Source of the DNA: Mytilus californianus
Lineage: Eukaryota
Assembly: GCF_021869535.1 (NCBI RefSeq)
Contig: NW_026262734.1
Span: 25,730,001-25,794,000 of the forward strand
Reading direction: 5' to 3'
Length of the DNA stretch: 64,000 nucleotides
Shown here: one piece after another, positions 288-60,295 of the stretch
Position numbering within the stretch: the stretch's first letter is position 1
How the letters are laid out: the number at the start of each line of letters is the position of its first letter
Notes under the pieces: generated by a model
Database searches by the model: none
What the model was told of the DNA's origin: nothing
The model's input: only the letters and a program-made list of their open reading frames with translations
Made by a program: the position numbers and the translations under genes

Positions 288-418
288 TTAACATTGAGCA
301 TAAGTTCCCGTTTCTAGTGCTGTTTGTGTATGACTGCCAACTCCCTGCCAATTTTGAAACCAATTGCAGAGATCTGTATAGTAAAATGTTCCAGTTGTCC
401 GTCCAGTCACTGCTGCTC
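288..418 (-). CDS. TIMP: TIMP-A coding exon 4 (...DLCNW...YAQC*)
   Basis: 131 nt; tttcag| acceptor; TAA at 290-288. Confidence 0.9.
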
Positions 419-3400
419 CTGAAAATTAAACAAAAAACACCTCTATATATTTCTATATAAAAACAAGAAAATGTGGTATGATGCCATTAAGACAACTATC
501 AATCAAAGTCAAAATGAAGTGAATGAAGCGATTAAAGGTAACCGTACAACAATGAGAAAAGAGAAAAGAGAAAAGACATACTGTATAGTTGCCTATAGAA
601 GGCCTCGACATGAAAAAATGTGTAACAAATAAATTGAGAAATTTCACCGCCTAATATATAACTAAACAATTTACGAAAAACACATATGACAGACATGAAC
701 CAACGTAAACCACTGAACTAGAGGCTCCTGATTCGGGGCAGGCACATACAGATTGTGGTGGGGTGAAACATGTCTGAAAGCGCAAACCCTTCATCTAACT
801 TGGTACATTGGTGCAACGGCACAACTTAAGAACAAGCTACAAAACTATTAGCAAAAATCAAACACGAAAAACAACAATATACAACAACCACTCGAGTACA
901 GGCTTCTGACTTTGGACAGGCACATATAGCATGTGGCGGGGTTAAACATGTTGTTGTTTTTGCTTCCGTATGTATCAGCAGTTTTGTATAAAAGTCTTTT
1001 AAAAGTAACTTCGCTTAAACACTGATTTATTTTATATTTAAACGAAAATGCAGAAATGGACATTACTTTGTAAATTTAGCTGGCTGAGATATTGCAATTT
1101 TATAATGAGGTTCAAATGTCGAATTATTGTATGATGATAAAGTCATCATTTTTATCTTCCATATTGACATAGTTTGCCTGTTTTTGTACCAAAAAGTAAA
1201 ATCACAAATATACTGAACTCCGAGGAAAATTCAATCGGACAGTTCCTAATCACATGGCAAAATCAAATGGCAAAACACATCAAACGAATGGACAACAACT
1301 GTCATATTCCTGACTTGGTACAGGCATTTTCAAATAGAAAATGGTGGATTGAACCTGGTTTTATAGCGCTAAACCTCTCATCAAATTTAATAATATTGAT
1401 AATGATGCGTGAACAAAACAAACAGACACAATAGGTAAAAATGTCACAAATAAAGGTAAGAAGTCTAATTCGGTAGGTCACATTCGGGAAAAGGGAACGG
1501 GATTGCAGTTACGACATAAGGAACATATCTGATATCATCCATATAACAGACATTCCATAATGGTCAACCAACTCGTGATGGCGTCCGTAAAATTTACGAA
1601 GTGATGATTTCAGCTTCCCAATACCAACAGTCATAAAAAAAAACTCTTTTTTTTTCTCTGAATGTTAAAAATGCATTAAACAGTGAAACTTTATAAAGAA
1701 GAAATAGAAATACTCACCTGCAATTAAATATTCAGTTCCTGTGTCTAGATGTACTCCACATGAATTATTCGGAGACCGAGAACGAAGTTTTATTGTATTA
1801 TTCACTATCATCTGTATTTATGGAAAAAAGAACAAATTACGAATAATGAAATTAAACAAATATCGTTTTATTACTACCAATCACAAATCGACCTGCTAAC
1901 AAATACCATATTTTATTGATGTATATCTCAAAAATGATTTTGAACCTTCTATCTCAGTTTTAACGAAATGGGTGTAAATCCAATATTTTGGGGTTTTGCT
2001 GTTGTGTGTCTCATTTGCTTTTTATGGTTTTGTTTATGCAAATGCAACTTCCATAGTATGGTGCAGTCCGTTGGATCCGTGCACTTAAGACGTTTGGCTT
2101 TACTTTACTGTGCTTATCCTGAAGGCTTTGGCCTATCACAATACCAATTGATCAAACAGTTTACCAAATTGCAGTTTGAATTCATCTCAACAAACATGAT
2201 CAACTGGTAAAATATTTTAGCAAATTGCATCAGTTGTTAGTATGAAGTGAGTGCAGTGAAGTAAAAGTAATGCTTATCATCCAACTATATTTACTTAATG
2301 TCTGTGCAATGGAAGTGAAATAAAATAATCACCTACTATCATGACTATATTATAAGGCACTGGTCTGAAGTTATTGTGTTATAAACTTCATAGTCTTGTT
2401 ACTCAGTCTTTAGTTTTCTTTGTTGTATTTTGTGTGCTGTTGTTTGTCTTTTGGCCTTGTTGTGTTATTGCCATGACGTTGTCAGTTCATGTTCGACTTG
2501 AATGTCTTTTTGGTATTTTTCACCTTGCTTTCTCTATCATATAATGTGTCGAATCTCTGTGGCATCAGCTTTTAGAAACATTGTCTTCATTTATGGGTCT
2601 CTGACGACCAAGTTTAAATTGCAGAGGTGAATGATTTAATTCGGAATATTCCCATATAAATGTTCATTCCGCTTTGAACTCGCGACCCCACAGACATTTT
2701 CTACTAATTATAAAAAAGAAGATGCGTTATGATTCATAAAACTGTTAAACGACAATTGTTCACTAGAGACCAGGTCACTCTACGCCAATTAAAGATGAGC
2801 AACTCTAACTACTTACTGCATAATTGTATAATACCTTAAAATTATCTTCCACATTCACATCATACTCAATATCACCGCTTGCAAGGGTCCTGTTGTTTTG
2901 GGCAATTCCTCGTATAACTTAATTAGCAAAAAAAAAATGATTTTGTTCTAAAGGTTTCCAGTAGGCAGACACAAAATAAAAGTGTAATAAATTCAAACAA
3001 ACAAGAATCTGACAATGCCAATGATACTCCCCGTAAAACATGTGATATTACTGCTTATTTTTCAATTGTATAATTGTGTAACTTATGGGTGACGTTTCAT
3101 CCCCAGGGTATTACCATTCCAGTAGTTAGTTCCATCTATACTTTGACACACCAAATATCACTGATATGTTCATTTTTTTTTTAATTGAATGTTTTATAAA
3201 TTTTTGAATTATTCTAAGCATCAAGGTTTTTGTAACACCGGGTTTAGGGTGTCCAACTCGTATTTGGCACATTTTTTTTTTCAATTTTGCGTTTTTTAAT
3301 GGTTATTGTATTTGGTTTGGCTTAATCACTGTTTCGATTCGAATGCAGCTGATGAGTATAATGTACATGTATATGCTCAGGGACAATACAATGTCAGATT

Positions 3401-3596
3401 CCTGGGAAAATAGTCACTAATACTTTTTTCAGAGTCACAAGATACATAAATTCATAACATTTAATTCTTTAAACTTACCGAAATCAGCGTTACAGAATGA
3501 ATTTATTTGTGTAAAGTTACTACATCTACATCCATATGCCTCAGAAATGAAGTTCATCAACATCAGACAAAACAAACTCACTATGGTTGTCTTCAT
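288..3596 (-). CDS. TIMP: TIMP-A: secreted single-domain (N-domain-only) TIMP-like protein, 141 aa, 4 coding exons
   Basis: join(3596-3479, 2917-2835, 1811-1718, 418-288), all GT-AG, phases 1/0/1. Protein MKTTIVSLFCLMLMNFISEAYG-CRCSNFTQINSFCNADFVIRGIAQNNRTLASGDIEYDVNVEDNFKMIVNNTIKLRSRSPNNSCGVHLDTGTEYLIAGAAVTGRTTGTFYYTDLCNWFQNWQGVGSHTQTALETGTYAQC*. Signal peptide, mature C-X-C start, FC..DFVIRG, VEY-like, FK, SCG and EYLIAG motifs, six mature Cys as in the TIMP N-domain. Confidence 0.9.
1718..1811 (-). CDS. TIMP: TIMP-A coding exon 3 (...NNSCGVHLDTGTEYLIAG)
   Basis: 94 nt; tacag| acceptor, G|gtgagt donor. Confidence 0.9.
2835..2917 (-). CDS. TIMP: TIMP-A coding exon 2 (VIRG...DNFK)
   Basis: 83 nt, same length as exon 2 of B, C and D; aag| acceptor, AAG|gtatt donor. 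Confidence 0.88.
3479..3596 (-). CDS. TIMP: TIMP-A coding exon 1 (signal peptide + CRC...FCNADF)
   Basis: 118 nt; ATG preceded by acceptor ttcag|gataacc; donor G|gtaag. Confidence 0.9.
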
Positions 3597-6500
3597 GGTT
3601 ATCCTGAAGGAAGACATACAAAATGTTTTCATCCTGCTATTGACCTTTCTACTATACATATACCGAGTAGCAGATAACATGAACCGAAAAACGTACACTA
3701 GACGTTTGTAGTCGCCTGGTATCCTGCTTCTGTTGCGAACGAACGGTTATGTACAAATTACCGTTTGCGTGACAGTCCAATTTTGAGTCCTCATTGCGGT
3801 CCGCGTTGAAGTCATGTCGATCTCATTAGCCAACGAATTTGATGGGAGAAAACTAAACGTTTACGCCTAATGTTAAATTGCCGAATGAAACAATATTCGC
3901 ACATTGAAGGAAATACAAAATTTAAAGGTACTTGCTACGTGATAGCAGAAAAGCTCGGCAAGCCTCACTTTTCTCTCTGTTTCTAACGCTCTTCTAATAA
4001 GTTTAGTATTTTAGCATGTTTAGGTAGAAAGCATCAATACTTCATATATCAGATTTTAAATATCAGTTGTATTTTGGGTAAAACATCTAAATAGCTATTA
4101 AACAGTAAAAATAATAGTTATTGTTCTTTGTAATTTTAGATTATTAACAATAGTTAAAAAATAGTGACATAGTCGTTATACTTATATTTGAATTCAGGAA
4201 TGTATTTTTTTTTTTTGTGTTTTTTAGCAGTTAAAGTCATAATGAATTGAGTTTCCTGTAATTTTAATGTTATCGAAATTATTGAATCAATGCATTCATA
4301 TATACTAAACCAAGTCCTTTATGCACGTTTTTTATATTATTACGAAACATATTATTCACAAATGATATATCATTCAGTGATTGTTAATCGGCAGCTAAGT
4401 AAATTTCGAGTTTCTTACCAATGATTACCGGATCGCGACATTGATACACAGTCAACGCAGTGCATATGGAGCACGTAACAAATAAATAAGTGAATGAACA
4501 GAGCCATGATATTTACATTTTCCATGCGTTACCTTTTGTTAATTTAAGTTTTCTTTAACAGCTGTTAAATGATTTGTTGTATTACATGTGCTCTTTAAGA
4601 ATCAGTTATTACTATTTACCTTCCAGTGTACAAATGTTGACATTCTTTCATCACGGTTTTCCCCTCGCATTTGCGCTGTATGGTGGCCGAAGTTCTAACG
4701 AGACGTCTCGTAGTTAAGGTCACTGCATACGTGAACATATCGGATAATAAGTGTACGGGAAGACAATAATTAAATAGCAGTACAGTTAAGAAAATTTTAA
4801 GAATATAAAGGGTGTTTGTCTAAAAGAAAGTACACTTGTTACAAAGTAAAACTTAGCTATTCAAGTATATAAAACATATTTATTTTTTAAATTTGAAGTT
4901 TCATATGATTTTCCTAAGAAAGTAGTAAAAAAACACATTTGTCAGCTTTGTGCATGGCGTCAATATTTTGTTGGGTGAATTATGGTGAATTATTGACCTT
5001 CTACCATAACTAATTTAATGTGATACAAAAATGTACTAATGATATTTGACTGATGTGAATTGGAATACTGAAAACAATGACTGATTGACTGGAAGAAGAC
5101 AGACGACAGGACAAGTCTAGTTTATATTGAATGAACGGTCACTCTGCAAGTGCTTAAAATACAATACAATACACAATATAATTTAATAGAAATACAATAA
5201 ACACTAAGATGCAATATGAATACAATAATCAACACAATTTTTAACAATGATACATTTAAATTACTGAAAAATGTATCGTGTTAAGCAAAAACCACATTAA
5301 ATATATATGTCCCGTTTCTTTTTCTTGGTGAATTTTGGTTTTTAATTACCATGCCTATCGATTCTGCAGAAAATATTTCTGAACTTTGATCACTCAAAAT
5401 AAAAATTTGTGCTGAGACGAAATATTACTCATATTGCTTTTCAGGTGTTGAACATATAAATGAAATCACAAATAGCCAGCCACAATAGAATATAAATAGC
5501 AGAACTTAAAAAGCAGAAAAAAATGATAGGTCCGTGTCCTTGTTTTTGAGATGTAAGCCGTAGAAAATTTGGCGGGAAATGATTCTCTCTAGATCTTTCA
5601 TAGAGTTAGCATTTGCAACTTTATTCTTTCAAAAACTATGAAAAAATAACAAGGATTTTATAAGATTTAAGAAAATGGCTTTCTAAACTTTATTTAATGA
5701 AATTATGAAAAGAAAAGTAGGGTTTAACGGGCAAAATTATTATTGGCACTACATGGATAAAACTAGAATATCTGAATTTCTGACAAAAAGTCAAAAACAA
5801 GAGTAGCAAACATCCTTACCATTTAAAATACAAACTTTGATTGATAAGACAGAAGAGAAATATACTTTGTTACTTGCAGATTCTTTTGATTATTTGAACC
5901 CTTAATAATGCTTTGAAAATGTAACAATCACGCGCTACATTTAGTATTTAAGAAGCTTAGACAATTAATTGACTCTATTAGATTTAGAGATAATCAGTTT
6001 CTGAATGATTTACGATATTAAATTTCACTGAATGTAATATAAATCAACTTTATACATGTACTTGAAATATTAAATGGGCATCAACTGTCAAATTCCTGTC
6101 CACCGATATGACCCAAATTTTAAAATTGTATTCATAAAATACAATAACGTATATCTTAATTGCAAAAAGTCCAAAAGGAACAATGTATCATCATTTCGTA
6201 CGTATTTTTGAACTCACGCCACCTTATTATCAATCGAGATAGAGATTGCATGTATAAGAATGATATTTTTGTAGGCAGGATCAGTCAAAAAAGTGTTTAT
6301 TCGCAATGGCTCCCTTATTCTACTTTTCAAAGTTGATATGTTTTTCTTTTTAATGAATAAACCACATAATGGACACATGTGCATCATTTGCACTAAATGT
6401 CAAATCAAAAGGTTCCATAAATACGGATTTAAATGAGTTGAATTGTTGACTTGTACGGCAATAAAGGCAACAGTAGTATACCGCTGTTCAATAGTCATAT

Positions 6501-10251: not shown

Positions 10252-10392
10252 CTTAGGTTATTGAATAAATAGATGTGTCTTTGTCTGAATTATTTAAATG
10301 TTTATATATACACTTGTGAACCGGATTTCGTAATAAATAATTCATATCATTCACTCTTAAAACATCCTTTATATGACAGAGTTGTGTTGTTG
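10252..10392 (-). promoter_or_regulatory. predicted promoter and non-coding first exon of TIMP-A
   Basis: Minus strand: CAACAACACAACTCTGTCATATAAAGG (10392-10366), AAATCCGGTTCA (10328-10317), TATATATAAA (10310-10301), then donor CTAAG|gtaaga at 10251. Same module lies upstream of B, C and D. Confidence 0.65.
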
Positions 10393-22440: not shown

Positions 22441-22575
22441 CAACAACACAACTCCGTGATATAAAGGTCGGGTTTTAAATTACACGTAGAGACTATGGTT
22501 ACAAAATCCGGTTCATAAGTATATTAATAAACGATTTCATATTAAGATCGTGATAATATTTCCATCTTGAACCAG
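22441..22575 (+). promoter_or_regulatory. predicted promoter and non-coding first exon of TIMP-C
   Basis: CAACAACACAACTCCGTGATATAAAGG (22441-22467), AAATCCGGTTCA (22504-22515), donor CCAG|gtaaaa at 22576. Confidence 0.6.

Positions 22576-28999: not shown

Positions 29000-29029
<30 letters not shown>
29000..29029. repeat. (TA)n microsatellite
   Basis: about 15 TA units directly after the satellite. Confidence 0.95.
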
Positions 29030-29034
<5 letters not shown>

Positions 29035-37691: not shown

Positions 37692-40600
37692 CTGAAATAT
37701 GAATAAGTCATGCAATGATACATTTATGTTTTTTTTTCCGCCGTGTTTTTCTTATTTTGTTTGATAAATGGACACCTCAATTCTTTTAAAATCCCTCTCC
37801 GAACTACTATCAAGTTTATCCTTCTTGTTGCAATTATTCTGTGTTTCTATATGATAAGTTTTTTTATTAAACTTTAAACAAATGCTTAGCAACATAGCTT
37901 CATAACGCTTTCCGAAACCATTCGTTATTACAGTATAACAGAAAAGTGGTAAGAATTCCAATGAGACATCTAGCCAGTAATGCAAAATTACTTGTATTTA
38001 AGCAGCTACATATCCCTGTAAGGATGTTAAAATAGATATTGTATAGTCAGCTGTAAAATGCCTCGACATGACAAAATGTGAAACAATTTAAACGGAAAAA
38101 TCAGTTATCCAATTTATCATAACCAATATAAAAAAGAAATGATAAAGAGCAACGAACGACAACCACTAAATCACTTGGATCAGGCACATAAATAATGTGA
38201 TGGGGTTAAACATGGTTTAAGCTTCCACGTATGTTAGTTTTGCTCACGCATTGTACTAAATATAATGGAATGTTATGCAACTGTCATACAAGCGAGAGGT
38301 TTAGGTAGCTATACAACCAGGTTGGATCCACCATTTTCTACATAAGGAAATGCCTGTACCGAGTCAGGAATATGACAGTTGTTTTCAATTCGTTTGATGT
38401 GTTTCAACTTCAGATTTTGTCGTTTGTTAAGAAACTTTCCGTTGGGGTTCGGTCTTTTTGTTATTGTTTTTGTTGATACAAACTTAGCGAAAAAAGATAA
38501 AAAAACGATATGCATGGCTATGAGAAGTAACTGTTGTCTTCAAACACAACAAAAAATGTACAATATATATATGCAGAGTAGCGTGCCATCTTGTAACGGT
38601 ACGTAAGTCAAAATACAAACCCCCATCACTGAGCTATTGTATTATGATTAATGATATTAAAATGTTGACGAGGTTCATTTGTAAGTTCGGAATAATGATT
38701 TCTTGTTTTGCACATTGTCATAGATTACATAATTCACATTGTATTCATATCAACGATATAAACAAGGTTTTTTTATTCATCTAAAAAATCATTACTAATG
38801 ATTATTGATTATGCAGGTATTGATTATGCAGGTACAAAAATTAATAATTGAGAAAAAATCACATATAAACTTTAATGAATTGCTTACTAGTTATACTACC
38901 GCTGTAAACATAATAAGGTTGATGAGCGATATTACATGATACTCTGATTCTGATCTGTAGTTCAATTGGAAACTGCGATAAACATCATTTCCTTTACGGA
39001 GAGAAGTATACACATAACCACCCCTACCTAACAAGGAATATAATCAAAGTACTCACCTGACAACAAATATACAACTCCTTTCTTAAAATTGACCGCACAC
39101 GTAGCTGAACTTCTGGCGGATCGAACTTTAAGTGTGTTTGAAACCTTGATCTGTGACATAAAAAAAGACATAAACAGATTGATAAGGTATGATAAGGTAT
39201 GATTTCAGTTTTCTTTTAAATTTATAATCGATTTGTTACTTAACACTATCTTTGCTTTTCGTTTATATCCCGAAAATTTCTACAGTTTTTGGTTGAATAT
39301 AAAGATAAGGAGCTGTGGTATGATTGCCAATGAGACAGCGATTGATGAATTTCATTGGAGGTTGTTTAACATGAAGTTGTGTTTTTGTTCTTTATTTTGA
39401 GATCGTTTGGAAGAAAAGAAGTATTGTCAATGGTTTTTTTAATCATACAATAAACATGATAAAAAGGTTAAATGGGACGAAAGCAAATTTCCTGATTTCC
39501 AATTTTCTTCAGGTCTACAAACCAACTACTAATGTTCAAAAATTACAACAACAAAAAACATTTTGATTAACAAATCAAATATCTATCTACGTTGAGTATA
39601 TGCCTCTTTCTGCTCCTGTAAACAAAACACTTGATTGTGTATCTCAATAGATTTAGTATATAGGGGTTTACAAACCATGAATACATAATATAAAACGAAG
39701 ATGAAGAATGATTTAATTCCGATGAATGCCAATGAATCAACTATCTATCCGAGTCTTAATGATGCTGAATTCAGCACGCTTAACTAGTTCAAATATGAGC
39801 AAAACCCCTACCGTATAAACAGCTAAACAAGATTTCGTCATGAACAAGTCTAAACAATTCAAACGAAAAAACCAACGACCTGATTAATAACAAAAATATA
39901 AACGAAAAACAAATGCAACAGACAGCAATCAAAGACAACCATTGAACTACAGACTCTTGACTTTAGACAGGCACCAGGTATTTTTTAAGCACATTATTAC
40001 TTGGATCGTTCAATATATGTCGCAATGCTTTAGTCTTTTTAGTATGAGATTTGTCAAGTATGGCAATAAAAACGCTATTAGTTTCTTGTTTAAATCAATA
40101 TACGGACTATTGTCCATTGGAAACTCTTTTACAATTAATTTACGGACTATTGTCAATTGGAAACTCTTTTACAGAGCAAATTAAAGTTGGTGTTCTTATC
40201 TCTATGTCTTTGAATGTGTGATAGTGTGTTTTGTCATGCATATACATTTAAAACTCTAAAACGTGACGTGTAGTGTCGATCATTGTCGCTCTTAGTGGTT
40301 ACCCTGCTTGAGTAGTTTTGCGTTTTGAACATATCTGTGATAGAGAACTCCGTAACAAGAGAACTAACAGATGCTAAACGTATCATTTAAAAATTAAAAA
40401 ACATTTTTAAAAAAATGTCACACGATTGTCGAATACACACATCGGCTTTACATACATGAATGCAGACCGTCTAGTTCGGTGATCTCTTCAATGTCAAAAA
40501 GCAGAAACCTACTCTTCTTGAAAGCTAGAGGTAATTTTTTTCTTTTTAGTGCTAGAAGTATTTTTAATGCAACACTGCCGACTGTTATGCTTGTTTTTAA

Positions 40601-42947
40601 CCTTTCAAAGGTACCAGAATGTAATATGAGTCACAGAATTATCCAAAAAATGTTAAATCGACACTAACATATTTTAATAAGATTACTAAATGCAAAACAT
40701 TGTCTGAATTAAAGCTGTTGCACTCATCTAAATATTGTTAACAAGAATTAAGATATAAAGTTTTGAAGTTTTTTAAAATGTTGTTTGAAGGGATAAAATT
40801 AAATATCTATAACGAAATTAGGATACTGATATTTTACAGAATATTTCTTGTGAACAATTGATGGATATTATTCCAATTTCATTGAACAAAACAATCGCCT
40901 TATAAACTTCCTCTGCATGAACCTCTGCAACGCATCTTAACGTGTATTTTAAGACTCATATTATATATTACCTTAAAATTATGGTTCACGGCCACTGTGT
41001 ATTCAACTTGATCTGCGCTCAGGTTCTTAATTCCTGTAACCTTTCCTCGTGAAACTAAAAATATAATCAAAGCTTTTCAAAAACTGGCGACCAAAACCTG
41101 TAGTTATAAATAAGAAGATGTGGTATGAGTGCCAATGAGACAACTCTCCATCCAAGTCACAATGTATTAAAAGTAAACAATTATAGGTCAAAGGACGGCC
41201 TTCAACACGGAGCCTTGGCTCACACCGAACAGCAAACACTATAGTGTTTGTATATAAGTAAAACTGAATAGAGGAAGTAGTAACGGTAAGTAATACAAGA
41301 CAGCTTAATGCTTTGTGTTGATAAAACAAGATTAATTTGAAGAAAAAAAATAGGCATTGATTTTCTATTGATTTTTCTTTATTCCATAGTCTTTTAAATT
41401 CTATATTTTTATAACGATCAAAAGGTACTCAATTCAACATAGAACATAAAAGGGCATTAGCTGTCAAATTCATGTTCACCGATTTAACTCAAATTCTGAT
41501 ATTTGATTTATAACATACTAAAACTTATAAAAATTAAAAATAAACAATTAACAATGCATGGACTCGATAATATGTATTAACATTTCAAGGCGTATTTTTG
41601 TCTAGACGTCAATTAATTAACCATCGAGACAACCTCCGAAGACTGCCTACGGTTATAAAACGATACAAACATAGTTGTAAATATAAATAGATAGCTACCA
41701 CGTGGAACTGGGTTTTTCGAGGTCTGTATTGTAGGTTAAAAAGTATGTTTAGCATCGTTTTTACTTGAAACATGCGTAACCCATCTCCAGCACAGGGGTT
41801 AAATAGATTGTCACATAAATATCGATTCAATGAGGTGAATAATTTATCAGCGATGGGTTTTGTTTTAGCTTATTTTGACAAAATTGAAGCAAACTGGCTG
41901 CTAAAAGCTAATTATTATTTCACTATTCCACTTTCATAAATGATTGAACAGAAAAAAACCGTATTCTATTTTTTTTTCATAACTCGTATCTAATGCCCTT
42001 TTAAGGTAAAATGAAAAAAGTTGCAATAATTATCATTCTCATGAAAGTAAAAGATGATTGCAGAATAAGAACAAATTAACCTTTGTAGAAACATTGAAAA
42101 AAATATAGAAATTGGTTCATTTAATGAGATGCAAATTTTTGTTTAGGGTTTCAATATTCACCAAAGAGATGGTTTATTGCAAATGATACGTGACTACATT
42201 TCAACTGCATTAATATATCATCATAACGAAGTTGTTGCATGTCCTACAATTTTGAATACTAATTATTGATTGGTTTTTTCAAGGGTGCTTAACGTCCGCG
42301 GGAGATAAGATACAAGTAGGACAATAAAATGCCAAAGGTATTTGTTCTCCATACGTAAAATATGTGTAAATGATCTGCTTTGTATTATGCACGATGAGTT
42401 GTGTTGTTTTTTAAAAGCCAGCTCTGAATTGGCTAGACGGTGAAAAACGGATCTATCTGAAAAAATACCTGATTTATTTCGTGCGTCTGAAGCACTTGTC
42501 TGAAATATATTTCATCTGCAAAGCTCAAACCTAGACAGAATAGCCATGTTCATGTAATTTATATTTTCGGGTTTGTCACGGAATGAAAATAAAAACCTTT
42601 ATTTAATAGTATTCGAGGCATAGATATGTTGTAGTGATGTAGTAAGTACAATATGCAAGACGACCTTAATGTTAAATAGAGACACATCAAGTTTTATAGA
42701 TTTCCGTTTTCCAACTGAATTATTTGTATTAAGTGTCCTATACAATTATAGACATCCAAATTATGTTAAAATTGAAGAATTTATAAAATCGAAATCTTTT
42801 TAATATCTGCATATATATACGGCTATTACCGAATTTAGCGCTACAGAACAATTCTTGATTTGTACCACCAGAACATGTACATCCATAGGCCTCGGAAATG
42901 ACATTTATCAGCACAAGACAAACGATGATTACTATCGTTAGCTTCAT
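37576..42947 (-). CDS. TIMP: TIMP-B: secreted single-domain TIMP-like protein, 136 aa, 4 coding exons
   Basis: join(42947-42830, 41054-40972, 39150-39057, 37691-37576), GT-AG, phases 1/0/1. Protein MKLTIVIIVCLVLINVISEAYG-CTCSGGTNQELFCSAKFVSRGKVTGIKNLSADQVEYTVAVNHNFKIKVSNTLKVRSARSSATCAVNFKKGVVYLLSGAVSGSTYHTTSCQWNHKWQDISSDTRTKLLGGQFNNC*. CTC start, SSATC and YLLSG motifs, six mature Cys. Confidence 0.9.
39057..39150 (-). CDS. TIMP: TIMP-B coding exon 3
   Basis: 94 nt; cacag| acceptor, G|gtgagt donor. Confidence 0.88.
40972..41054 (-). CDS. TIMP: TIMP-B coding exon 2
   Basis: 83 nt; tttag| acceptor, AAG|gtaata donor. Confidence 0.88.
42830..42947 (-). CDS. TIMP: TIMP-B coding exon 1
   Basis: 118 nt; ttcag|aataaccATG; G|gtaata donor. 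Confidence 0.9.
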
Positions 42948-43680
42948 GGTTATTCTGAAATAAAGACTACTGTATTTTATTCAGTAAATGAGCCGTCATT
43001 TTACCTTATAAATGTTTCAGAAAACATGTTTTACGAAAAATGAAATATCACTTATACTGACTATAATAGCAGATACGCTTAAAAAAACGAGTATGTTTAG
43101 ATTAGCTGAGTTTGTTGTTTACAGTAGACATAAAAGACGAATTTAATTTTCTTTGATTGACAAATAGGAAATATGAACAACGCAAAATATATATAAAATG
43201 TATAACTCAGTTGAATCGCAATAAAGAAATAAAATCCTCACACCATAACAATATGCAAAAATTATGGCGACAGTTGTTTAACGATGTTCAAATCTGGTAA
43301 ATCGATGAGGAAAAATAAATTAAAAAAAAAACACAACGTAAGGTATAAATATTCAAACAGCGAGACAAGAACCAACAAAACCCCTAACGTGTTGAAGTTC
43401 TTATCAACATGGCATAAAAATTTAAAAAAAAATCAAATGTGGAATCAGGGCATATATTTTTTAAACATTGAAAATGATAGAGGTTACTGGTTTTTGTTTT
43501 AAGCATTGACTTAAAAAAAGTGGAAGGATGCCAATATATTAAGGAAGAGATGAAAATATAAGGAACTACAATTTATCAAATTATAACAGATTTTAACAGT
43601 TAGATACAACACATTTCATATCTTATTAATCATGGAAACAAAATTATATATTATATAGTGAAGCACAACAAGTATCTTAC

Positions 43681-43820
43681 CTTTAGTTATTGAATAAATA
43701 GACGTGCCTTGTCTGAATTATCAAACCGTTTATATATACACTTGTGAACCGGATTTCGTTATAATTAATCCATATTATTAACTCTTAAAACAACCTTTGT
43801 ATGACAAGGTTGTGTTGTTG
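43681..43820 (-). promoter_or_regulatory. predicted promoter and non-coding first exon of TIMP-B
   Basis: Minus strand: CAACAACACAACCTTGTCATACAAAGG (43820-43794), AAATCCGGTTCA (43756-43745), TATATATAAA (43738-43729), donor TAAAG|gtaaga at 43680; closely collinear with 10252-10392. Confidence 0.65.
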
Positions 43821-48088: not shown

Positions 48089-48225
48089 CAACAACACGAC
48101 TCCGTGATATAAAGGTCGGGTTAAGACATAATAATCAGACAGTAAGTGTTACAAAATCCGGTTCATTAGTTTATCTATGCACGATTTCATAATTAGAATT
48201 TGATAATATTTCCATCCTAAACAAG
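48089..48225 (+). promoter_or_regulatory. predicted promoter and non-coding first exon of TIMP-D
   Basis: CAACAACACGACTCCGTGATATAAAGG (48089-48115), AAATCCGGTTCA (48154-48165), donor CAAG|gtaaga at 48226. Confidence 0.62.
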
Positions 48226-52308: not shown

Positions 52309-53964
52309 TGATTGATATTTCATACTGTTATTTTCATTTGCCATCTTTATTTATTGAAATGAATTCGGAGCACATTCACACATGAAATATTAACCCGTGT
52401 TTCTTTTCTGACCGTAATCATGATAATATACACGATTTTGCACTCTGTTCCGAATTTCCTATAAAAATGAAAAGAACACTTTCATCAAAAATTTAAAACT
52501 ATTTTTCTTATTTAGTATTCACTAACAACCCATCAATACCTTATATTTTAGAATCAAATACAAAGTGTGTTTGGAGTCGAAATGTGTTTTAATTAATACT
52601 TAACAGATGAATGGAAATATCATTTAACAACAATGATCAAATTTTCGTATTATCTATTTTTATATCAATTATTTACATTACAGTTGATACATTTATGGAT
52701 TGTTATGTATTTGAAACATGAGGATTAAGGTAATTATGTTAAAGATTTGATACGTTTTAATATACGAAATGGTGACTCACTTCATGAGATGACAACATTT
52801 TTAATATTGCATGTATTTTTGTGACGGGGGATCAGAAATTCTAAAAGTGTCATATATAGACAGAAACGTTTGGAACGCCAGCAGTAAAAGATTGATTTCT
52901 CTAATGAAAGTTCATTTGTCACATTTAGGTTCGTTTTATATATATAAAAACTCATCAAAGATATCAGGCTTAATATTTGTCACGCCAGACGCGCGCGTCT
53001 ACATACGAATCACTAGTGGCGCCCAAATCAAAACGGTCGGAAGGCTAAATCAAATATGTAGTTGAAGAGCATTAAAAACAACAATTCCGAAAAAGGTGTA
53101 CCAAATACAGTTCAATAGATCTATGCGTCGTTGTAGGAACACCAAATGTTTCGAATAAAGCAACGTTTCATGATCAGTAAATTTACAGACAATGAACATA
53201 TCAATGATATTTCATGTCACAAAAAGTGATGTCTACTGGGAGTTAATATATATATATCGTAAAATAAAACCCAAGAAAAACTGTTATTTCACATCTAGAA
53301 TTTCTTCCTCGGGGGACCTGACGAAAACAATTCAGTGTAACTAAATGCGTAAAAACTAATATCATAAAGTATAAAGAATAAAAAATTTAAGAAAAAATTG
53401 TTTTTTGTTCATGAATCAACAAGGAAACTGGCTATATTGCAATGGAAATATTAGCTCTTTTATGCTTACTTCTTACTTAGATATAGTAACAAGAAATATA
53501 AGGCTTTAATATACAATCAAAGATATCCACAAGATAGAAAATGAAATATGAGATCGTGATGGCGAGGCCATAAGATAATGACAAGTTCATTTTAGAAGTC
53601 AAAAATTCATTTTCTTTTTACAGTTATTTTACTACTCGAATCTGTCTTCCGTCAAAATCATGAACATATACCTAATGTTTTCATACTGTCTAAGTTTATA
53701 ATTTGTAAATATAAAGTAAATGACATATAAGGTATATGTCATATATGTTACACAAACCAGCATTTAAAGATAAACAGATTGCACTAAATACGGGTGGACA
53801 ATAAAACTTTAGTGTTTGTCTATTACAAGTTACTCGTATTGCATTACCGCGGTCTCGTCTCGAGCATGCCCTATGAGTCCCATAAATTGCTTTGTAACCT
53901 GACAATAATGACAGCTTCAAAACGTGATTAATAAAGTTGTAGTCTATCTTCTTTCAGAATAACT

Positions 53965-54088
53965 ATGAAGACACCTATAGTGACTTTGTTTGGTCTTCTG
54001 TTGATTAATTTACTTTCTGAGGCGTATGGATGTGTATGCATTGACCGAAATCGTACAAACAAAAAGGATTTCTGTAAAGCTACTTTCG
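53965..54088 (+). CDS. TIMP: TIMP-D coding exon 1 (not in ORF track)
   Basis: 124 nt; tttcag|aataactATG; G|gtaag donor. Confidence 0.9.
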
Positions 54089-57000
54089 GTAAGATTTAGG
54101 AATTTAATTTTATGCTTTTCTGATTTTTCACATAGGATGACAATCTCCATTTGCAAATGAAAAGAACGCTTCATAACTTTTATTTGTAAGAAGCGCTTTT
54201 CCTGATTTATCATGCATGTTCAAACCCAGATATGGTATTTGAAATAAGAAGAAACGTTAAGAGTAATATGACCAAAACAGCAACACACATTAGAATTGGA
54301 TATACATTTTTGTTAAATGTAAAACGAGAAACGAATTACGAGATAAATTATAAAAAAAAATCAACCTTTATTGAATCTTTGTTTTAATGTCCCTCACCAT
54401 CGTTATCGTTGTTGCCTTCTGTTTTGAATCGAGTGTAACTAAATGTAGACACAACTCGTGTCTTGAGTGCTTATAAGACTGATCACTTTGACGAGTTTTA
54501 ATTGTTACATAAGGATGAAGAAAAAAAAGATGTCGGGTCAATGTCAAGTTTACAACGACACATCGACATAGTTGACCAAAAGACATCCAGAACTTAAGAT
54601 TGGTTTTTCATACAGAAAACCAGGTGTCGTTATAGTGTAGCAAGACATAATTTGCCACTAGTAGGTTTATATCCAACAGGAACGCTCAAATCCAAGGATA
54701 TTTAAATGCTTGAGTACTTTGGAAGCTTTATGACAAAAAGGCATCTTAAAATAATAGCCAAATCTACTTGATGAACTTTTCATTAGGGATTTGGAACCTT
54801 AGTTTCATATTGATTTAAACATTTACCAACGCAGAATTATGACAAGTATGTTATTATTCATGCAATGACTCAGCGCTAATGATTTTCCTGGAGACGATCA
54901 TTTCATTTTTTGAGGATTAGATTCGGTTCGAAATCTATCTTGCTTGATAGGCTGAAACCTATACACATGGATATTAAAGAAGAAGCCTATTGACTTTAGA
55001 GATCAACAGGCAAGAGGTCAGTTAAATGTTACTGCATACCGAATGTTCTTGGGAACAGTAAGTTTTTGGATGGTAACGTTAGTTTCCTTTATAGGTTTAG
55101 TAGGACATCTATTGAAATGAAACATATTTTCTTATCTTCAACAATATAATTGGCCTTGAGTTCCGGGACCTGGCAGGTTAGCAATGGTAAAGAAAAACCC
55201 TGTCCAATTTGTGGTAAGTGTTTGCCTTCTTATATGTATATTGGTTCTCTGAAAAAAGTATTGGTAACAATGTTGGTTTTCAGTTACCTGACTTTGTATA
55301 CTCTCTAGATCATACAGTCCTTGCTTAGTTGTTTTTTTCCATAATAGTCAAGCATCCTATTGTAAAATGTAACGCATTTATACAGGTAAAAATAAGCAAT
55401 ATATGAACATGTTTTTTGTCGTCCAAGGATACTTGTATTTTGAACTAAAAATGTATTCATTCACTTAATGTGCAGTTCGGGAAGCATCATTCGTTGTGCC
55501 AGCTTTTCGTTTGTTTGAATATACTACACTGCTATTTGTCGCTGCACACAGGAAACATTTTGAACAAAATAATTTCATCGACTTCGTTTTTTATTAAAGT
55601 AGTACGAGGAATTGTCAAAAGCAGAAAGGACTGTGGAGCTGCTGAAGTTGAGTATAAAGTGAAAGTGAAAGATACTTTTAAGGTAGTGTACACTGTGATA
55701 TATAGTATTACTGAACGGTATGAGTTTTGTCCATCGTTGAATGACGTTTGGCGACCTATAGCTATTTACATCCTCGTCATTTTATCTCTGGTGTATAATT
55801 GTCTCTTTGGTAATCATGCCTCATCTCCTTATTATCGAATTCAGCAGTCCATTATGAAATTACCAAATAACATTCTTTACATGCGTCCAAGTATTTTCCT
55901 GCACTTAAGTGACATATTTTAATCATCGTGTACATCAATAGATCAAATTAACATGATAATGCAGGTTTTTAATGTTTACAACGTAAGGGCTACATTATTT
56001 CTCTAACTGTGCCTCATTCTTAATAAAATATGATATTTAAATTCTTTATTGTAAAACATAGTGTCTTCTGATTCAATTAATAGTTGCATTAGAAAAGCAC
56101 GAAGCACACAATCAATAAAAAAAGATATTTATGTTCACAATATATAAAGGAGAAACGCAGGGTCAGATATGATAAGAAAATATCTTAATTATTGTAGACT
56201 ACATAGTGTGTTGATGCCAATCATTTTCAAATGAATTTTACAGATTATAATCAAAGCACGACAACTGAATAAAGCTAATTCAAAAGGTTCACATTTGGAA
56301 TTCAATACTTAAAATACTGTTCTCCAGCAGACTGTCCATATATAATATTAAATCTAACATCTATTATAAAATCTTAAAAGTAAGTAAGTATGCCCAACGA
56401 TTAGATTTACTGATGAATATTTCCAATCTTTAAAATTATAGCACAGAATAATATCAAAAACCTTTTTTCTGAGTGTATTGATATACTGACCAAAATAGAA
56501 AGGTTTAGACTTGAAATTTTACATATTATTTAAAGCTCTAATACGATGTATATTAGATATTTCTGGAAAATTCAATAACTATTTTCATTGTTAACCATTT
56601 ATTATCAGCAAAATGTAATCAAACGTAATTTTTTGAGACATATTTCGGTGCAGCGTTACATATTAATTTGTTATCACTACCAGATTAAAAACAATATCAA
56701 GATTTTTACTTGGAGAACTAAACTGTTGAACAATAAATGATGCAATAGCTATCACTGATATTAATCTTACATATTTTGCAGAAAAAAAATGTGTACACAC
56801 TAAAAATACAACTCATTAAGAACTATGATAGTTGAATATGCAAAAGAAAACACAAAAAGCAAATGAGGCATACAAAAGCACATCAAACAAATGCGATTAA
56901 CACCCATTTTGTTAAAAAAACAGAGATTCAAGGTTGGTAAGCTTTTTTTGGCATAGACCAATAAGATATGCAGCATTTAGTAGCAGGTCGATGATGAGTA

Positions 57001-60000
57001 GTGATAACACATATCTAGATCTGTTTAATTTCATTATTTGTATATTTTTTCTCTTCTTTTTGCAAAGTTACAGAAAAAAGTGAAGAAAATAATGAAGATT
57101 CGTTCTCCGGTCCATTCATGTGATCCGTTTCTTGCGATAGGATCTGAATATTTAATTTCAGGTAAGCATTTCAATTCGTTCTTTAAAAAAAAATCATGTT
57201 TTAAAGCATTTTTATCATTAGCAAAACCAGTGATTCGCGATGCGTTAAAGACCCATTGGTGGCCTCGGGCTGGTTCCTATTCGTTAGTCGGGTTGTTGTC
57301 TCTTTGAAAATTCCATGCTTCTATTATTTATTCTATTGGTTACAGAATTTGATTTTAGTGCCGTGTGGAGATAGTAGAGTGCCTTTGCGTTCTTAAGGTG
57401 TATGCTCTTACAAATTACAAAATAATATAGTATGTAAGTCCGAGCAAGAACTTCTCTCTGTTCATGACTTTAGGCATATTTATCTAAAACTCATATTCAA
57501 TTATGAAATCGTCCAAAGTATGATTGCTTACTGATATTTTAAACTGTTTCCCATAACTGATCGACCTGAATATTAAAAACAAACTGTTTTGTAAATCAAA
57601 TATGTAAATAAAGGTTGTGATTTTAAAAATATTGCCGGTATTCTTAATGATCGTGCTGTAAAAGAACAAATTCCTGATTATTTTGGTGATACTGAGCTCC
57701 CTCTTATTTGTTATGTTTACCAAAAATTTGCCCCCCCTTCCCCCCGAAATACGTTTTTAATCATAGCGATGTGTGTAAGATTTAAATATCAGTAACAACA
57801 CCTATGTCATGAAATTGTAGAAATTAAATTTACATTTATGGCCCCAGTTCCGATGTGATAACCAGAGATCTTTACATTGTCAAGGACCGAGAGTTAAAAT
57901 TATTCCTTCGAAAAGGACAAAAATATCGTCACTGGTCAATAATAAATTGGAATGAGTGTCGTGACATCATCAACGTTTCACTACATACTTACTGTATACA
58001 ATGGATAAAACGGAAAAAGCTGCTGAAAAGAAAACCTTAGATTTTTTTTTTTCAATTCAGTACTGAAATTATTTGATATTCGGATTTAACATTTCAAAGA
58101 ACATTTGACTCCTAGCAACAACTATAATCATGGCCATATTTGACGTTTCAAATTTAAGCTAAATGAACTCAGCAAGACATTTGTTTTCGTCCCGGCTGAT
58201 AAGGCTGTAATTAATATCATTATTGTCTGACGTAAATTTTATATTGAGGTTCTGCAAAAGGAAATTACATATTCACCAACATTTCAACTGACTAAATTTT
58301 CGGAAAATGACATCGTTATCAAACTTACACTTGTTGCTACTTATTTACAATCAGAACTGAATAACATGATAGTTCTAACTATGAGCTGGCTTCCGACGCT
58401 GCAAAAAACCTGACAATAAAATTTTCAAAAAAGGTCTACAAAAATAGTGGAATTCATTACTTTTGGAGTGCCAATGATTCGTTTGAAGTACTTGATAAAT
58501 TGCCAGCTCATTTTGGTGCTTTCGAAACTGCCTACCCTATATACCACTTTGTTTCATAAACGCCATTTTGTACCAGGTTATATTTGTCTTTTTGACATTG
58601 TTTTAAAACTTTTTTTATTAAATTTGTATTTATATTTTGTCATAGATCAAATTTATTCGTACAGTGTATGTTTACTTGTTTTTGTAAATATGTCTTTTTG
58701 ATCGACTTAAGCTATTTCAATTGCTATTTTGTCTCTGTTTATGTTGTAATGTTACACTATTGTTTCAAGTTAGGGTGAAGGTTGGCGCCTGTTAAACATT
58801 TAAACCCGTATTTGTATGCACCTGTCCTAAGACAGGAGCCTGTTTAGTGGTTGTCGTTTGTTGATGTGGTTCATAAGTGTTTCTCGTTTCTGTTTTTTTA
58901 TATAGATTAGACTGTTGGGTTTTCCTGTTTTAATTGTTTTACACTAGTCATTTTGGGGCCCTTTATAGCTTGCTGTTCGGTGTGAGCCAAGGCTCCGTGT
59001 TGAAGGCCGTACTTTGACCTATCATTGTTTACTTTTTACACATTGTGACTTGGATGGAGAGTTGTCTCATTGGCATTCATACCACATCTTCTTATTTCTA
59101 ATTATTCACAAGGAATATAGTTGATACTGTTACTGATACTGTCAAGTCATTACAAAAATAATTAATATTGATTCACTCATAGGGTCTTTGCTTTGGAAAT
59201 GAACACATTTATTTAAAACCAGTTGTTGGCATGATACGGGATATGTTCCTCTCGTATAAGTTATAATGGTATCATACTGAACCCTTAACGGGAGTTAATC
59301 TTGTTCATTTTTATATGATGATGACATAATCTTTCAATCAGTTTAATTGAAGTCTAAATATGTCTTGAATGTCAGTAACTGTTCGTAGTCCTTTGTATAT
59401 TTGTGTTAATCATTGTCATTTTGCTTAATTTCTATGTTACCTATTCTATCATCAGATTCGGACTTCTTTTAAACCGAGTTTTACATTGCGTTTCACTGTG
59501 TGTTTCTTTATTCTACATACGGTACAGGTATAGGAGAAGGATTGAGGAGATCTAACAACACATGTTAACTCCCACTCCTTCCCCCGTATTTTCGCGCCTG
59601 TTCCATGTAAGGTACATCTGGCCTTTGTTAGTCTTGTGTGTTGTTTTTAGTTTTGGATCATTGAATGTTTAAGAGTTGAGAGTGCTGTCCATTTCGATAA
59701 GCTATTATATATTTTTTTAGGGGCCAGCTGAAGCCTGCCTCCGGGTGCAGGATTGTATCGCTGTATTAAAAACCAGTTGGCCTTGGGATGTTTTCTGCTC
59801 TTTACATCGGTTGTGGCCTCTTTGACACATTCACCTTTATCATTTTCTATTTTATTTTTTGATAAAAAAAAAATGTTTACGGTTGTTGTTGAACAAAAAA
59901 GGTAAAATATGTTAATATGGAAACAACTAAGGTTATAACTTGTTTATCATACAAAGCAAAGCATCACGTCGATATTTGAACCTGCTATATAAAAAATGAA

Positions 60001-60295
60001 ATTACTCAGCCAAGAAGAAATGCTAAGTTATGTCCATGTTTCTGCCTGCACTACACTGTTGTTCGAAAATTAAAAAAAAAGTGGTTCAAGCGAATTAAAC
60101 GGACTTGTGAACAATACAGAAACAAACAAACAGAAATGCATTACAAAGTTGTTATTTATTCATATTTCAGGAGTCATAAGGGGAGAATTTTACTATACAG
60201 ATTACTGCTATTGGTATCAAATTTGGCAGACTATTCCAAAGGATACACAAACAGCACTAGAAACGGGAACTTTTGCTCAATGTTATTCACTATAA
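53965..60295 (+). CDS. TIMP: TIMP-D: secreted single-domain TIMP-like protein, 139 aa (141 with the upstream alternative acceptor), 4 coding exons
   Basis: join(53965-54088, 55600-55682, 57074-57161, 60171-60295). Protein MKTPIVTLFGLLLINLLSEAYG-CVCIDRNRTNKKDFCKATFVVRGIVKSRKDCGAAEVEYKVKVKDTFKKKVKKIMKIRSPVHSCDPFLAIGSEYLISGVIRGEFYYTDYCYWYQIWQTIPKDTQTALETGTFAQCYSL*. Seven mature Cys. Confidence 0.88.
55600..55682 (+). CDS. TIMP: TIMP-D coding exon 2
   Basis: 83 nt; aag| acceptor, AAG|gtagt donor. Confidence 0.88.
57074..57161 (+). CDS. TIMP: TIMP-D coding exon 3
   Basis: 88 nt from ttacag| (aligns with the A acceptor atacag|); in-frame alternative AG at 57066-57067; G|gtaag donor. Confidence 0.85.
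57570..58560 (+). mobile_element. Penelope-like retroelement relic, N-terminal RT half (TIMP-D intron 3)
   Basis: VITRDLYIVKDRELKLFLRKGQKYR, FVFVPADKA (58195-58203), WLPTLQKN, YFWSANDSFEVLDKL and LPTLYTTL resemble the PLE RT motifs ITGDL..KGPKYR, VPADKA, YWLPKLHK and LYTT; many stops and frameshifts. Confidence 0.7.
58690..59100 (-). mobile_element. SINE-like interspersed repeat copy (interrupts the PLE relic)
   Basis: collinear with 12775-13190. Confidence 0.75.
60171..60295 (+). CDS. TIMP: TIMP-D coding exon 4
   Basis: 125 nt; tttcag| acceptor; ends ...AQCYSL*. Confidence 0.9.

What the first reader, a model, noticed from the sequence alone, without database searches (positions are those of the whole stretch)
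288..60295. Hidden cluster of minimal, N-domain-only TIMP genes
Seen: three intact spliced genes and one broken copy with identical exon architecture (non-coding exon plus about 118/83/94/120 nt coding exons, phases 1/0/1). Each encodes signal peptide + C-X-C and ends at or just after the sixth Cys. Established: vertebrate TIMPs have 12 Cys in two subdomains; the six-Cys N-domain alone inhibits metzincins through Cys1 coordinating the zinc; single-domain TIMPs are known in some invertebrates such as nematodes. Inference: a lineage-specific expansion of compact, divergent secreted inhibitors, possibly for defence against pathogen metalloproteases or for shell/byssus matrix protection. Whether it is already annotated cannot be judged from sequence alone.
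Basis: partly seen in the sequence, partly recalled or inferred. Interest (0 to 1): 0.75.

Follow-up and report, generated by a model that had tools for sequence, protein, structure and literature searches.

The report
Single-domain TIMP gene cluster in mussel
The window holds three intact genes and one decayed copy of a fast-evolving, mussel-specific family of small secreted proteins that match only the inhibitory half of TIMP metalloproteinase inhibitors; the family is already annotated in Mytilus, though these three genes seem to have no protein record.

Summary
Genes A (288-3596, minus), B (37576-42947, minus) and C (53965-60295, plus) each have four GT-AG coding exons in phases 1/0/1. Each encodes 136-141 residues: a signal peptide, Cys-X-Cys, and a stop at or 3 residues after the sixth conserved Cys. 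Copy D (about 22.5-31.1 kb) keeps the promoter, exon 2 and exon 4 but lacks coding exons 1 and 3.

The window is Mytilus californianus (GCA_021869535.1, JAKFGE010000008.1, from about 25.73 Mb). TIMP homology holds by proxy:
- A 94.6%-identical paralogue just outside the window scores 47 bits on Pfam TIMP (cut-off 23.1).
- It matches N-TIMP-2/3 in the PDB.
- Its AlphaFold model (pLDDT 91) has TIMP-1/2/3 as the top 18 structural matches.

No C-domain exon was found in the window. Annotated relatives in five Mytilus species stop at the same Cys.

The family is not new. RefSeq calls its members "NTR domain-containing protein-like" or "metalloproteinase inhibitor-like". One M. coruscus relative is named "Protease inhibitor-like protein-A". 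TIMP expansion in pteriomorph bivalves is published.

What is new is small: A, B and C have no protein record, and the mature peptide evolves fast behind a conserved signal peptide.

The scan noted a different atypical TIMP elsewhere in this genome.

The parts
288..418 (-). Gene A coding exon 4 (131 nt including TAA); ends ...TGTYAQC*
   Evidence: exon-level Pfam TIMP hit E=0.058 at profile positions 92-129
1718..1811 (-). Gene A coding exon 3 (94 nt; holds the S-C-G 'connector' Cys and EYLIAG)
2835..2917 (-). Gene A coding exon 2 (83 nt; VIRGIAQ...)
3479..3604 (-). Gene A coding exon 1 (ATG at 3596; 8-nt leader after an AG acceptor): signal peptide, C-R-C, FCNADF
10252..10328 (-). Gene A promoter block (AAATCCGGTTCA, TATATATAAAC at 10310-10300) and inferred short non-coding leader exon ending at 10252 before GTAAG
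   Evidence: inferred from conservation, no RNA evidence
22504..22575 (+). Copy D promoter block and leader-exon homologue (donor after 22575)
25856..25938 (+). Copy D exon-2 homologue, open frame with AG/GT borders
26918..29149 (.). 542-bp satellite (4 or more copies) in the interval where D's exon 3 is missing
30985..31115 (+). Copy D exon-4 homologue, open frame ending ...TGTFAQC*
   Evidence: Pfam TIMP E=0.0091
37576..37691 (-). Gene B coding exon 4 (ends ...GQFNNC*)
39057..39150 (-). Gene B coding exon 3
40972..41054 (-). Gene B coding exon 2
42830..42955 (-). Gene B coding exon 1 (ATG at 42947): signal peptide, C-T-C
43681..43756 (-). Gene B promoter block and inferred leader exon (donor after 43681)
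48154..48225 (+). Gene C promoter block and inferred leader exon (donor after 48225)
53957..54088 (+). Gene C coding exon 1 (ATG at 53965): signal peptide, C-V-C
55600..55682 (+). Gene C coding exon 2 (holds the extra, subfamily-conserved Cys in KDCG)
57074..57161 (+). Gene C coding exon 3
60171..60295 (+). Gene C coding exon 4 (ends ...TFAQCYSL*)

Best explanation
The window is part of an array of at least 330 kb on a Mytilus californianus chromosome that carries a Mytilus-specific subfamily of TIMP (tissue inhibitor of metalloproteinase) genes. These genes encode only the N-terminal, netrin-like (NTR, OB-fold) inhibitory domain.

Shown here: three genes (A, B, C) are intact. Each has a conserved TATA promoter block and four coding exons, and encodes a pre-protein of 136-141 residues. 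The signal peptide ends ...SEAYG, so the predicted mature protein starts with Cys1-X-Cys3. It carries the six N-domain cysteines at the TIMP positions and stops at or just after the sixth.

Inferred: a tiny non-coding leader exon precedes the coding exons. The roughly 115-residue, three-disulfide proteins are secreted. They bind metzincin proteases as TIMPs do, with the free amino group and carbonyl of Cys1 chelating the catalytic zinc and residue 2 entering the S1' pocket.

The paralogues keep the signal peptide and the scaffold (Cys, G, Y, W, the EYLISG motif). They diverge fastest in the segment right after Cys1; residue 2 is R, T, V, K, S or E across the family. This suggests diversification of target specificity.

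The likely site of action is extracellular matrix made by mantle or foot (shell matrix, byssus) and/or haemolymph defence. Copy D is a dead member. The array grew by local and inverted duplication.
For: Gene models, splice sites and phases.

Organism and position: L001 bases 22780-27299 equal window bases 1-4520 at 100% identity.

Family membership:
- P0001 is 94.6% identical to A. It scores Pfam TIMP E=2.8e-12 (47.2 bits against a 23.1 cut-off) and NTR E=6.7e-7. It matches PDB N-TIMP-2 (2tmp) at 5.9e-6 and N-TIMP-3 (3cki_B) at 1e-5, with C1, C3, C13, the S-x-C-G connector, EYLIAG and L-C-x-W aligned.
- P0003 (70% identical to B), P0080 and P0081 (66-69% to B), and P0085 and P0077 (63% and 61% to C) all score 38-46 bits on PF00965, over profile positions 3 to about 130 of 183 only.
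- Exon 4 of A and of D hit the same profile stretch on their own, at E=0.058 and 0.0091.

Fold: the AlphaFold2 model of P0001 has pLDDT 91.2. Its 18 best Foldseek PDB matches are TIMP-2, N-TIMP-3 and TIMP-1 (TM up to 0.73 by target length), followed by other NTR modules.

N-domain only: tblastn with 18 C-domain halves finds nothing, polyadenylation signals follow the stops, and relatives annotated in five Mytilus species stop at the same Cys.

Selection:
- With the observed differences placed at random, the open frame survives in 1% of trials or fewer.
- The signal peptide has dN/dS 0.2-0.44 and the mature region 0.75-1.57. For A against C the bootstrap median is 1.66, with a 95% interval of 0.93-2.88.
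- Column entropy is lowest in the signal peptide (0.66) and highest in mature residues 1-12 (1.51).

Matrix link: P0085 is named 'Protease inhibitor-like protein-A [Mytilus coruscus]'. Sister entries with that name (PILP-B1, B2, B3) are M. coruscus shell-matrix proteins (PMC5623705). NTR/TIMP-type proteins occur in the Perna shell proteome and the M. coruscus byssus proteome (PMC6641155).
Against:
- No protein record for A, B or C was found although four paralogues in the same array are annotated. That could mean low or no expression.
- Mature-region dN/dS near 1 also fits relaxed constraint.
- Charged residue 2 (Arg in A; Lys and Glu in relatives) is atypical for MMP-inhibiting TIMPs, as was noted for helminth single-domain TIMPs (PMC3679795).
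- A scallop byssal TIMP-like protein showed no inhibitory activity (PMC5975577).
- The spliced A, B and C models themselves were not run against Pfam, the PDB or a structure predictor. Membership rests on exon-level hits and on relatives that have protein ids.
Confidence: 0.7

Rival explanations
1. Same fold and origin, but the proteins are no longer protease inhibitors. They would be structural or cross-linking components of shell matrix or byssus, as proposed for the scallop byssal TIMP-like protein Sbp8-1. This applies most to the C-type subfamily, which has a conserved seventh, unpaired Cys.
For: C, P0077 and M. coruscus PILP-A (P0085) all carry an extra Cys in the motif KDCG. Sbp8-1 has extra free Cys, polymerises and showed no inhibitory activity (PMC5975577 abstract). 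PILP-A carries the name used for M. coruscus shell-matrix proteins. Residue 2 is Arg, Lys or Glu in several members.
Against: The signal peptide followed directly by Cys-X-Cys, which is the feature needed for zinc chelation, is strictly kept in A, B, C and ten relatives. A and B have exactly six Cys. The two roles do not exclude each other, since inhibitors are embedded in shell matrices.
Confidence: 0.2
2. A, B and C are unexpressed or dying duplicates (young pseudogenes) in a birth-and-death array. Only the annotated paralogues would be functional.
For: No protein record was found for A, B or C and no RNA holder was listed. Mature-region dN/dS is about 1. Dead or damaged copies lie next door: D lacks two exons, and A' has a premature TAA and a triplicated exon-3 segment.
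Against: Open frames, the ATG, all 8 splice dinucleotide pairs per gene, six Cys and the promoter block are kept despite 26-40% nucleotide divergence. The chance of that under random substitution is 1% or less for the frame alone and under 0.03% with the Cys included. The signal peptide is under clear purifying selection, with dN/dS 0.2-0.44.
Confidence: 0.07
3. They are ordinary two-domain TIMP genes whose C-domain exons were missed.
For: Only 287 nt lie downstream of gene A inside the window, and no reads could be laid.
Against: An in-frame stop follows the sixth Cys in A, B, C, D and A'. The 6.4 kb downstream of B and the 3.7 kb downstream of C hold no C-domain-like frame. RefSeq and cDNA-derived relatives of 135-146 aa end at the same place. 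The duplicate A' has 5 kb of downstream sequence (L001), and nothing further is called there.
Confidence: 0.03

Closest known systems
Mytilus 'NTR domain-containing protein-like' / 'metalloproteinase inhibitor 1-like / 3-like' RefSeq proteins. Examples: M. trossulus XP_063397353.1 (P0003), M. californianus XP_052072495.1 (P0077), plus P0001, P0080 and P0081; also M. edulis and M. galloprovincialis members.
   Same: The same family. They have 135-146 aa, the same four coding exons, the same ...SEAYG|C-X-C start, six Cys and a stop at the sixth Cys. P0001, P0080, P0077 and P0081 lie in the same chromosomal array as the window.
   Different: A, B and C are distinct paralogues. A is 94.6% identical to P0001, B is 70% identical to its nearest relative, and C is 63%. 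None has a protein record of its own. The annotated twin of A (P0001) is the copy with a premature stop.
Mytilus coruscus 'Protease inhibitor-like protein-A' (UniProt A0A0K0YB15; P0085)
   Same: It is the closest named relative of gene C (63% identity). It is single-domain, has seven Cys including the KDCG Cys, and matches Pfam TIMP and NTR.
   Different: It is the orthologue of P0077 rather than of C (tree). Its place in the shell proteome is inferred from its name series; I could not read the original paper.
Vertebrate TIMP-1 to TIMP-4 (PF00965; PDB 2tmp, 3cki, 1uea, 2e2d)
   Same: The N-domain matches: Cys1-X-Cys3 directly after the signal peptide, Cys13, the S-x-C-G connector, EYLI(A/S)G, the L-C-x-W region, the OB fold and three disulfide positions. 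The isolated N-domain of vertebrate TIMPs is an active inhibitor (established knowledge; restated in PMC3679795).
   Different: There is no C-terminal domain, so 6 Cys rather than 12. Identity is 18-29%. Residue 2 is often not Ser or Thr. The AB loop is shorter.
Single-domain TIMPs of nematodes and other helminths (C. elegans CRI-2, hookworm TMPs) and of cnidarians
   Same: They are N-domain-only, secreted, often have atypical residue 2 (Lys, Arg, Gln) and form lineage-specific expansions (PMC3679795; PMC4860685). A 141-aa Steinernema protein was among the hits (P0032).
   Different: These are independent lineages at 30% identity or less. In the tree they lie outside the Mytilus clade on long branches.
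Bivalve two-domain and atypical TIMPs (oyster Cg-TIMP, scallop Sbp8-1, the expanded Pteriomorphia TIMP repertoire of Ma et al. 2023)
   Same: They are tandemly expanded in pteriomorph bivalves, are linked to immunity, shell and byssus, and usually have five exons (PMC10755359; PMC5975577).
   Different: Those studied have a C-domain or extra Cys-rich tails. The paper does not single out an N-domain-only Mytilus array.

Membership tests
TIMP (Pfam PF00965) | Significant match to the TIMP profile | tested here: met
   Met by proxy and by exon. P0001 (94.6% identical to A) scores 47.2 bits, P0003 (70% to B) 45.5 bits, and P0077 and P0085 (61% and 63% to C) 42.6 and 38.6 bits, against a cut-off of 23.1. 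Exon 4 of A and of D alone give E=0.058 and 0.0091 at profile positions 92-129. The joined A, B and C models were not submitted.
TIMP (Pfam PF00965) | Mature N-terminus is Cys1-X-Cys3 directly after the signal peptide, leaving a free alpha-amino group on Cys1 for zinc chelation | tested here: met
   A, B, C and ten relatives read ...(S/H)(E)A(Y/H)G|C-X-C. Small residues at -1 (Gly) and -3 (Ala) fit the signal-peptidase rule. No signal-peptide predictor was available and the cleavage site is not experimentally known.
TIMP (Pfam PF00965) | Six N-domain cysteines at conserved positions (C1, C3, C13, connector Cys, EF-loop Cys, C-terminal Cys) | tested here: met
   Cys columns are nearly invariant in the 52-sequence alignment. 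They align with TIMP-2 C1, C3, C13, C72 and C101. The sixth Cys is the last or fourth-last residue. Actual disulfide pairing was not determined.
TIMP (Pfam PF00965) | OB-fold (NTR) N-domain structure | tested here: met
   The AlphaFold2 model of P0001 has pLDDT 91.2 and pTM 0.78. Foldseek PDB ranks 1-18 are TIMP-1/2/3, with E down to 1.5e-6.
TIMP (canonical two-domain form) | C-terminal domain with six further Cys | tested here: not met
   A stop codon comes at or 3 codons after the sixth Cys. Pfam matches end at about profile position 130 of 183. No C-domain-like exon was found in the window. These are therefore N-domain-only members, like helminth TIMPs, and not canonical TIMPs.
TIMP (functional definition) | 1:1 tight-binding inhibition of metzincin proteases | not testable with these tools
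   Needs recombinant protein and enzyme assays.
NTR / C345C module (Pfam PF01759) | Match to the NTR profile | tested here: met
   P0001 scores 29.5 bits, P0080 30.6, P0081 26.4 and P0085 30.0, against a cut-off of 21.9. P0003 has no NTR hit and P0077 is just under the cut-off. Complement C345C, PCOLCE NTR and agrin appear below the TIMPs in the fold search.

The most novel reading that the evidence does not exclude
The Mytilus N-domain-only TIMP array may be an arms-race family. A conserved secretion signal and cysteine scaffold would carry a hypervariable inhibitory edge (residue 2 is R, T, V, K, S or E), diversified by positive selection to cover different pathogen or endogenous metzincins. 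Gene birth and death, including intact but unannotated copies, would supply the variation. That would make it a protease-inhibitor counterpart of mussel antimicrobial-peptide families.
Probability: 0.25. Interest if true: 0.55.

Novelty: new member of a known kind. Interest (0 to 1): 0.3.

Why it matters
The report adds three intact, apparently unrecorded members and one pseudogene to a Mytilus-specific single-domain TIMP family, and places them in an array of at least 330 kb.

If these genes are expressed, they offer naturally minimised TIMP scaffolds of about 115 residues with varied P1' residues. Those are useful for studying how inhibitor specificity evolves, and for work on mussel shell, byssus and immune biology.

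There is also an annotation lesson: the annotated twin of gene A is the copy with a premature stop, while the intact copy has no protein record.

Nothing here changes what is known about TIMPs in general.

Tried and rejected
- Single exons against Pfam: only exon 4 of A and D gave weak TIMP hits. Exon 1 of B gave a spurious 'Conotoxin' signal-peptide hit at E=0.21.
- Single exons against the PDB: exon 4 of A matched designed 'Pizza' beta-propeller repeats, because weak repeat scores were summed (each stretch about 4.5 bits). I rejected this as an artefact. Exon 1 gave nothing.
- Word search with P0001 found only P0001 itself. The family became visible only through the exhaustive HMMER search and a profile that included the B and C exons.
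- Exons 1 and 3 of copy D: not found by tblastn or blastn-short at permissive thresholds.
- C-domain exons: none found.
They were assembled only inside sandbox scripts from window.fa, for local alignment, identity, dN/dS, simulation and tree work.
- Positive selection: the pairwise NG86 intervals include 1, so it is not claimed.
Full report
**1. What is in the sequence**

A scan for signal-peptide-plus-C-X-C frames found three candidates. Translated self-comparison then linked each to three further short exons. Exact borders were read from the sequence.

| Gene | Strand | Coding exons | Protein |
|---|---|---|---|
| A | minus | 3479-3596, 2835-2917, 1718-1811, 288-418 | 141 aa |
| B | minus | 42830-42947, 40972-41054, 39057-39150, 37576-37691 | 136 aa |
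| C | plus | 53965-54088, 55600-55682, 57074-57161, 60171-60295 | 139 aa |

All introns are GT-AG and the phases are 1/0/1. Each product has a hydrophobic leader ending ...SEAYG, then C-X-C (CRC, CTC, CVC), FC-x-A-x-F | V-x-RG across the first intron, S/T-C-G/A/D, EYL(I/L)(A/S)G, a C-x-W...W block, and a final Cys. A and B stop right after that Cys; C stops three residues later.

Each ATG is preceded at -8 by an AG acceptor. Roughly 0.7-6.7 kb upstream, all four copies share a block: AACAACAC-AC...GT-ATA-AAAGG, then AAATCCGGTTCA, then a TATA-like box, then AAG|GTAAG 54-59 nt after the box. This argues for a leader exon of only about 25-30 nt. That exon is inferred from conservation, not seen in RNA.

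Copy D (plus strand) keeps this block (22504-22575), an open exon-2 homologue (25856-25938) and an open exon-4 homologue (30985-31115). Its similarity to C's first intron ends exactly where coding exon 1 should begin, and the acceptor and ATG are gone. No exon 3 is detectable. A 542-bp satellite occupies 26918-29149. D is a pseudogene.

**2. Where the window comes from**

The stop-free frame around A's exon 1, scored over the exon only, found one protein. This was P0001, 'metalloproteinase inhibitor 3-like [Mytilus californianus]'.

Its locus (L001; GCA_021869535.1, JAKFGE010000008.1:25,707,222-25,734,520) overlaps window bases 1-4520 at 100% identity. The window is therefore M. californianus, starting at about 25,730,001.

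P0001 is not gene A. It is A', an inverted, tail-to-tail duplicate just left of the window, 96-98% identical in DNA and 94.6% in protein. A' carries a CAA-to-TAA change that removes the last 12 residues, including the sixth Cys. It also has three tandem copies of the exon-3 segment.

Further members of the same array, all on the same contig, are:
- P0080 at 25.864 Mb
- P0077/P0011 (LOC127710584) at 25.934 Mb
- P0081 (LOC127711925) at 26.038 Mb

All have the same four coding exons, and more family exons without protein records lie in their flanks.

**3. Is it a TIMP?**

I did not submit the joined proteins to any search, family, structure or look-up tool.

Exon-level results are weak but point the right way. 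Exon 4 of A and of D hit PF00965 at profile positions 92-129, with E=0.058 and 0.0091.

The decisive evidence comes from relatives that have protein ids:
- P0001 scores TIMP 47.2 bits and NTR 29.5 bits.
- P0003, P0080, P0081, P0077, P0085 and P0002 score 38-46 bits on TIMP. The match always covers profile positions 3 to about 130 of 183, which is the N-domain only.
- P0001 matches the N-domains of TIMP-2 and TIMP-3 in the PDB, with the cysteines and the FCNAD-VIR, CGV-LD and EYLIAG motifs aligned.
- An AlphaFold2 model of P0001, built on a 52-sequence family alignment, has pLDDT 91.2.
- Its 18 best Foldseek matches in the PDB are TIMP-1/2/3. Other NTR modules (complement C345C, PCOLCE, agrin) follow.

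**4. N-domain only?**

- The C-halves of 18 two-domain TIMPs from the exhaustive search find nothing in the window (best E=0.18).
- Downstream frames show no Cys-rich exon, and AATAAA/ATTAAA signals lie 115-250 nt after the stops.
- Relatives of 135-146 aa annotated in M. trossulus, M. edulis, M. galloprovincialis, M. coruscus and M. californianus end at the same Cys.
- Direct read evidence could not be obtained.

**5. Is it hidden?**

The family is not hidden. RefSeq names its members 'NTR domain-containing protein-like' or 'metalloproteinase inhibitor 1-like / 3-like', and UniProt has 'Protease inhibitor-like protein-A' from M. coruscus.

A, B and C themselves do look hidden:
- No protein 85% or more identical to them appears, apart from A' for gene A. 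This holds for a word search seeded with A's exon 1, for a profile holding the B and C exons, and for local comparison with all 85 fetched proteins.
- The called-gene table for L001 lists nothing over gene A.

That table may not be complete, so this point is likely rather than proven.

**6. Evolution**

A, B and C are 44-53% identical to each other. In a maximum-likelihood tree:
- B pairs with M. trossulus P0003.
- C is sister to the pair P0077 + M. coruscus PILP-A.
- A and A' group with M. coruscus P0002.
- Short TIMP-like proteins from other bivalves, a crinoid and a nematode fall outside on long branches.

The signal peptide is conserved (dN/dS 0.2-0.44). The mature part is not (0.75-1.57; for A against C the bootstrap interval is 0.93-2.88).

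Column entropy is lowest in the signal peptide and highest in mature residues 1-12, the TIMP inhibitory edge. Residue 2 is R, T, V, K, S or E.

Random placement of the observed substitutions keeps an open frame in 1% of trials or fewer, and the six Cys as well in under 0.03%. The genes are therefore maintained. Positive selection is plausible but not shown.

The C-type subfamily has a conserved seventh Cys.

**7. Function**

The best-supported reading is a secreted, three-disulfide, N-TIMP-like inhibitor that works through the Cys1 wedge. That mechanism is established for TIMPs; applying it here is inference.

A matrix role is suggested by several lines:
- PILP-A's name series. The sister entries PILP-B1, B2 and B3 are M. 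coruscus shell-matrix proteins (PMC5623705).
- NTR/TIMP-type proteins in the Perna shell proteome and the M. coruscus byssus proteome (PMC6641155).
- The link between pteriomorph TIMP expansion and immunity, shell and byssus (PMC10755359).

A non-inhibitory, cross-linking role, as proposed for scallop Sbp8-1 (PMC5975577), is the main rival, especially for C.

Single-domain TIMPs with atypical residue 2 are already known in helminths and cnidarians (PMC3679795; PMC4860685).

**8. Verdict**

Novelty is low: these are new members of a known, already annotated family. The minor points of interest are the apparently unrecorded intact copies, the fast-evolving inhibitory edge and the array structure.

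My data agree in part. A's promoter region is 82% identical to B's over 883 bp, while its 3' part matches D and its protein groups with C rather than B.

The scan also noted a different atypical TIMP on another piece of this genome (s1-312196). I did not test it.

Noticed in passing
window 1-9764 and L001 3831-17623 (just left of the window): Gene A and its surroundings form one arm of a large inverted, tail-to-tail duplication, 96-98% identical with a spacer of about 5 kb. The other arm carries A' (P0001), which has a premature TAA, a 2.9-kb insertion and three tandem copies of the 574-bp exon-3 segment. The annotated copy is the damaged one. This could also be a haplotype assembly artefact.
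   Followed up: partly
window 26918-29149: A satellite of 542-bp units (4 or more copies, 96-99% identical) lies inside the pseudogene D, where exon 3 is missing.
   Followed up: partly
window 9765-11420 versus 43205-44931; window 145-1075 versus 30494-31278: Gene A looks mosaic. Its upstream region is B-like (82% over 883 bp), while its 3' end and downstream region are D-like and its protein groups with the C type.
   Followed up: partly
window 10328-10317, 43756-43745 (minus strand); 48154-48165, 22504-22515 (plus strand): An invariant 12-mer, AAATCCGGTTCA, lies about 6 nt upstream of the TATA-like box in all four copies. A further invariant AACAACAC block lies about 60 nt upstream of it. 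Both are candidate shared regulatory sites.
   Followed up: no
window 55600-55682 (gene C exon 2): An extra Cys in the motif KDCG is conserved in C, P0077 and M. coruscus PILP-A. It gives the C-type subfamily an odd, probably unpaired cysteine.
   Followed up: partly
L002 931-3341, L003 23086-25527, L004 28399-28515, L005 9-4616: More exons of the family lie in the flanks of annotated members, both in M. californianus and in M. trossulus. No matching protein was among those fetched, so unrecorded copies may be common in these arrays.
   Followed up: no
window 20079-20214: A 31-bp minisatellite, 4.4 copies.
   Followed up: no
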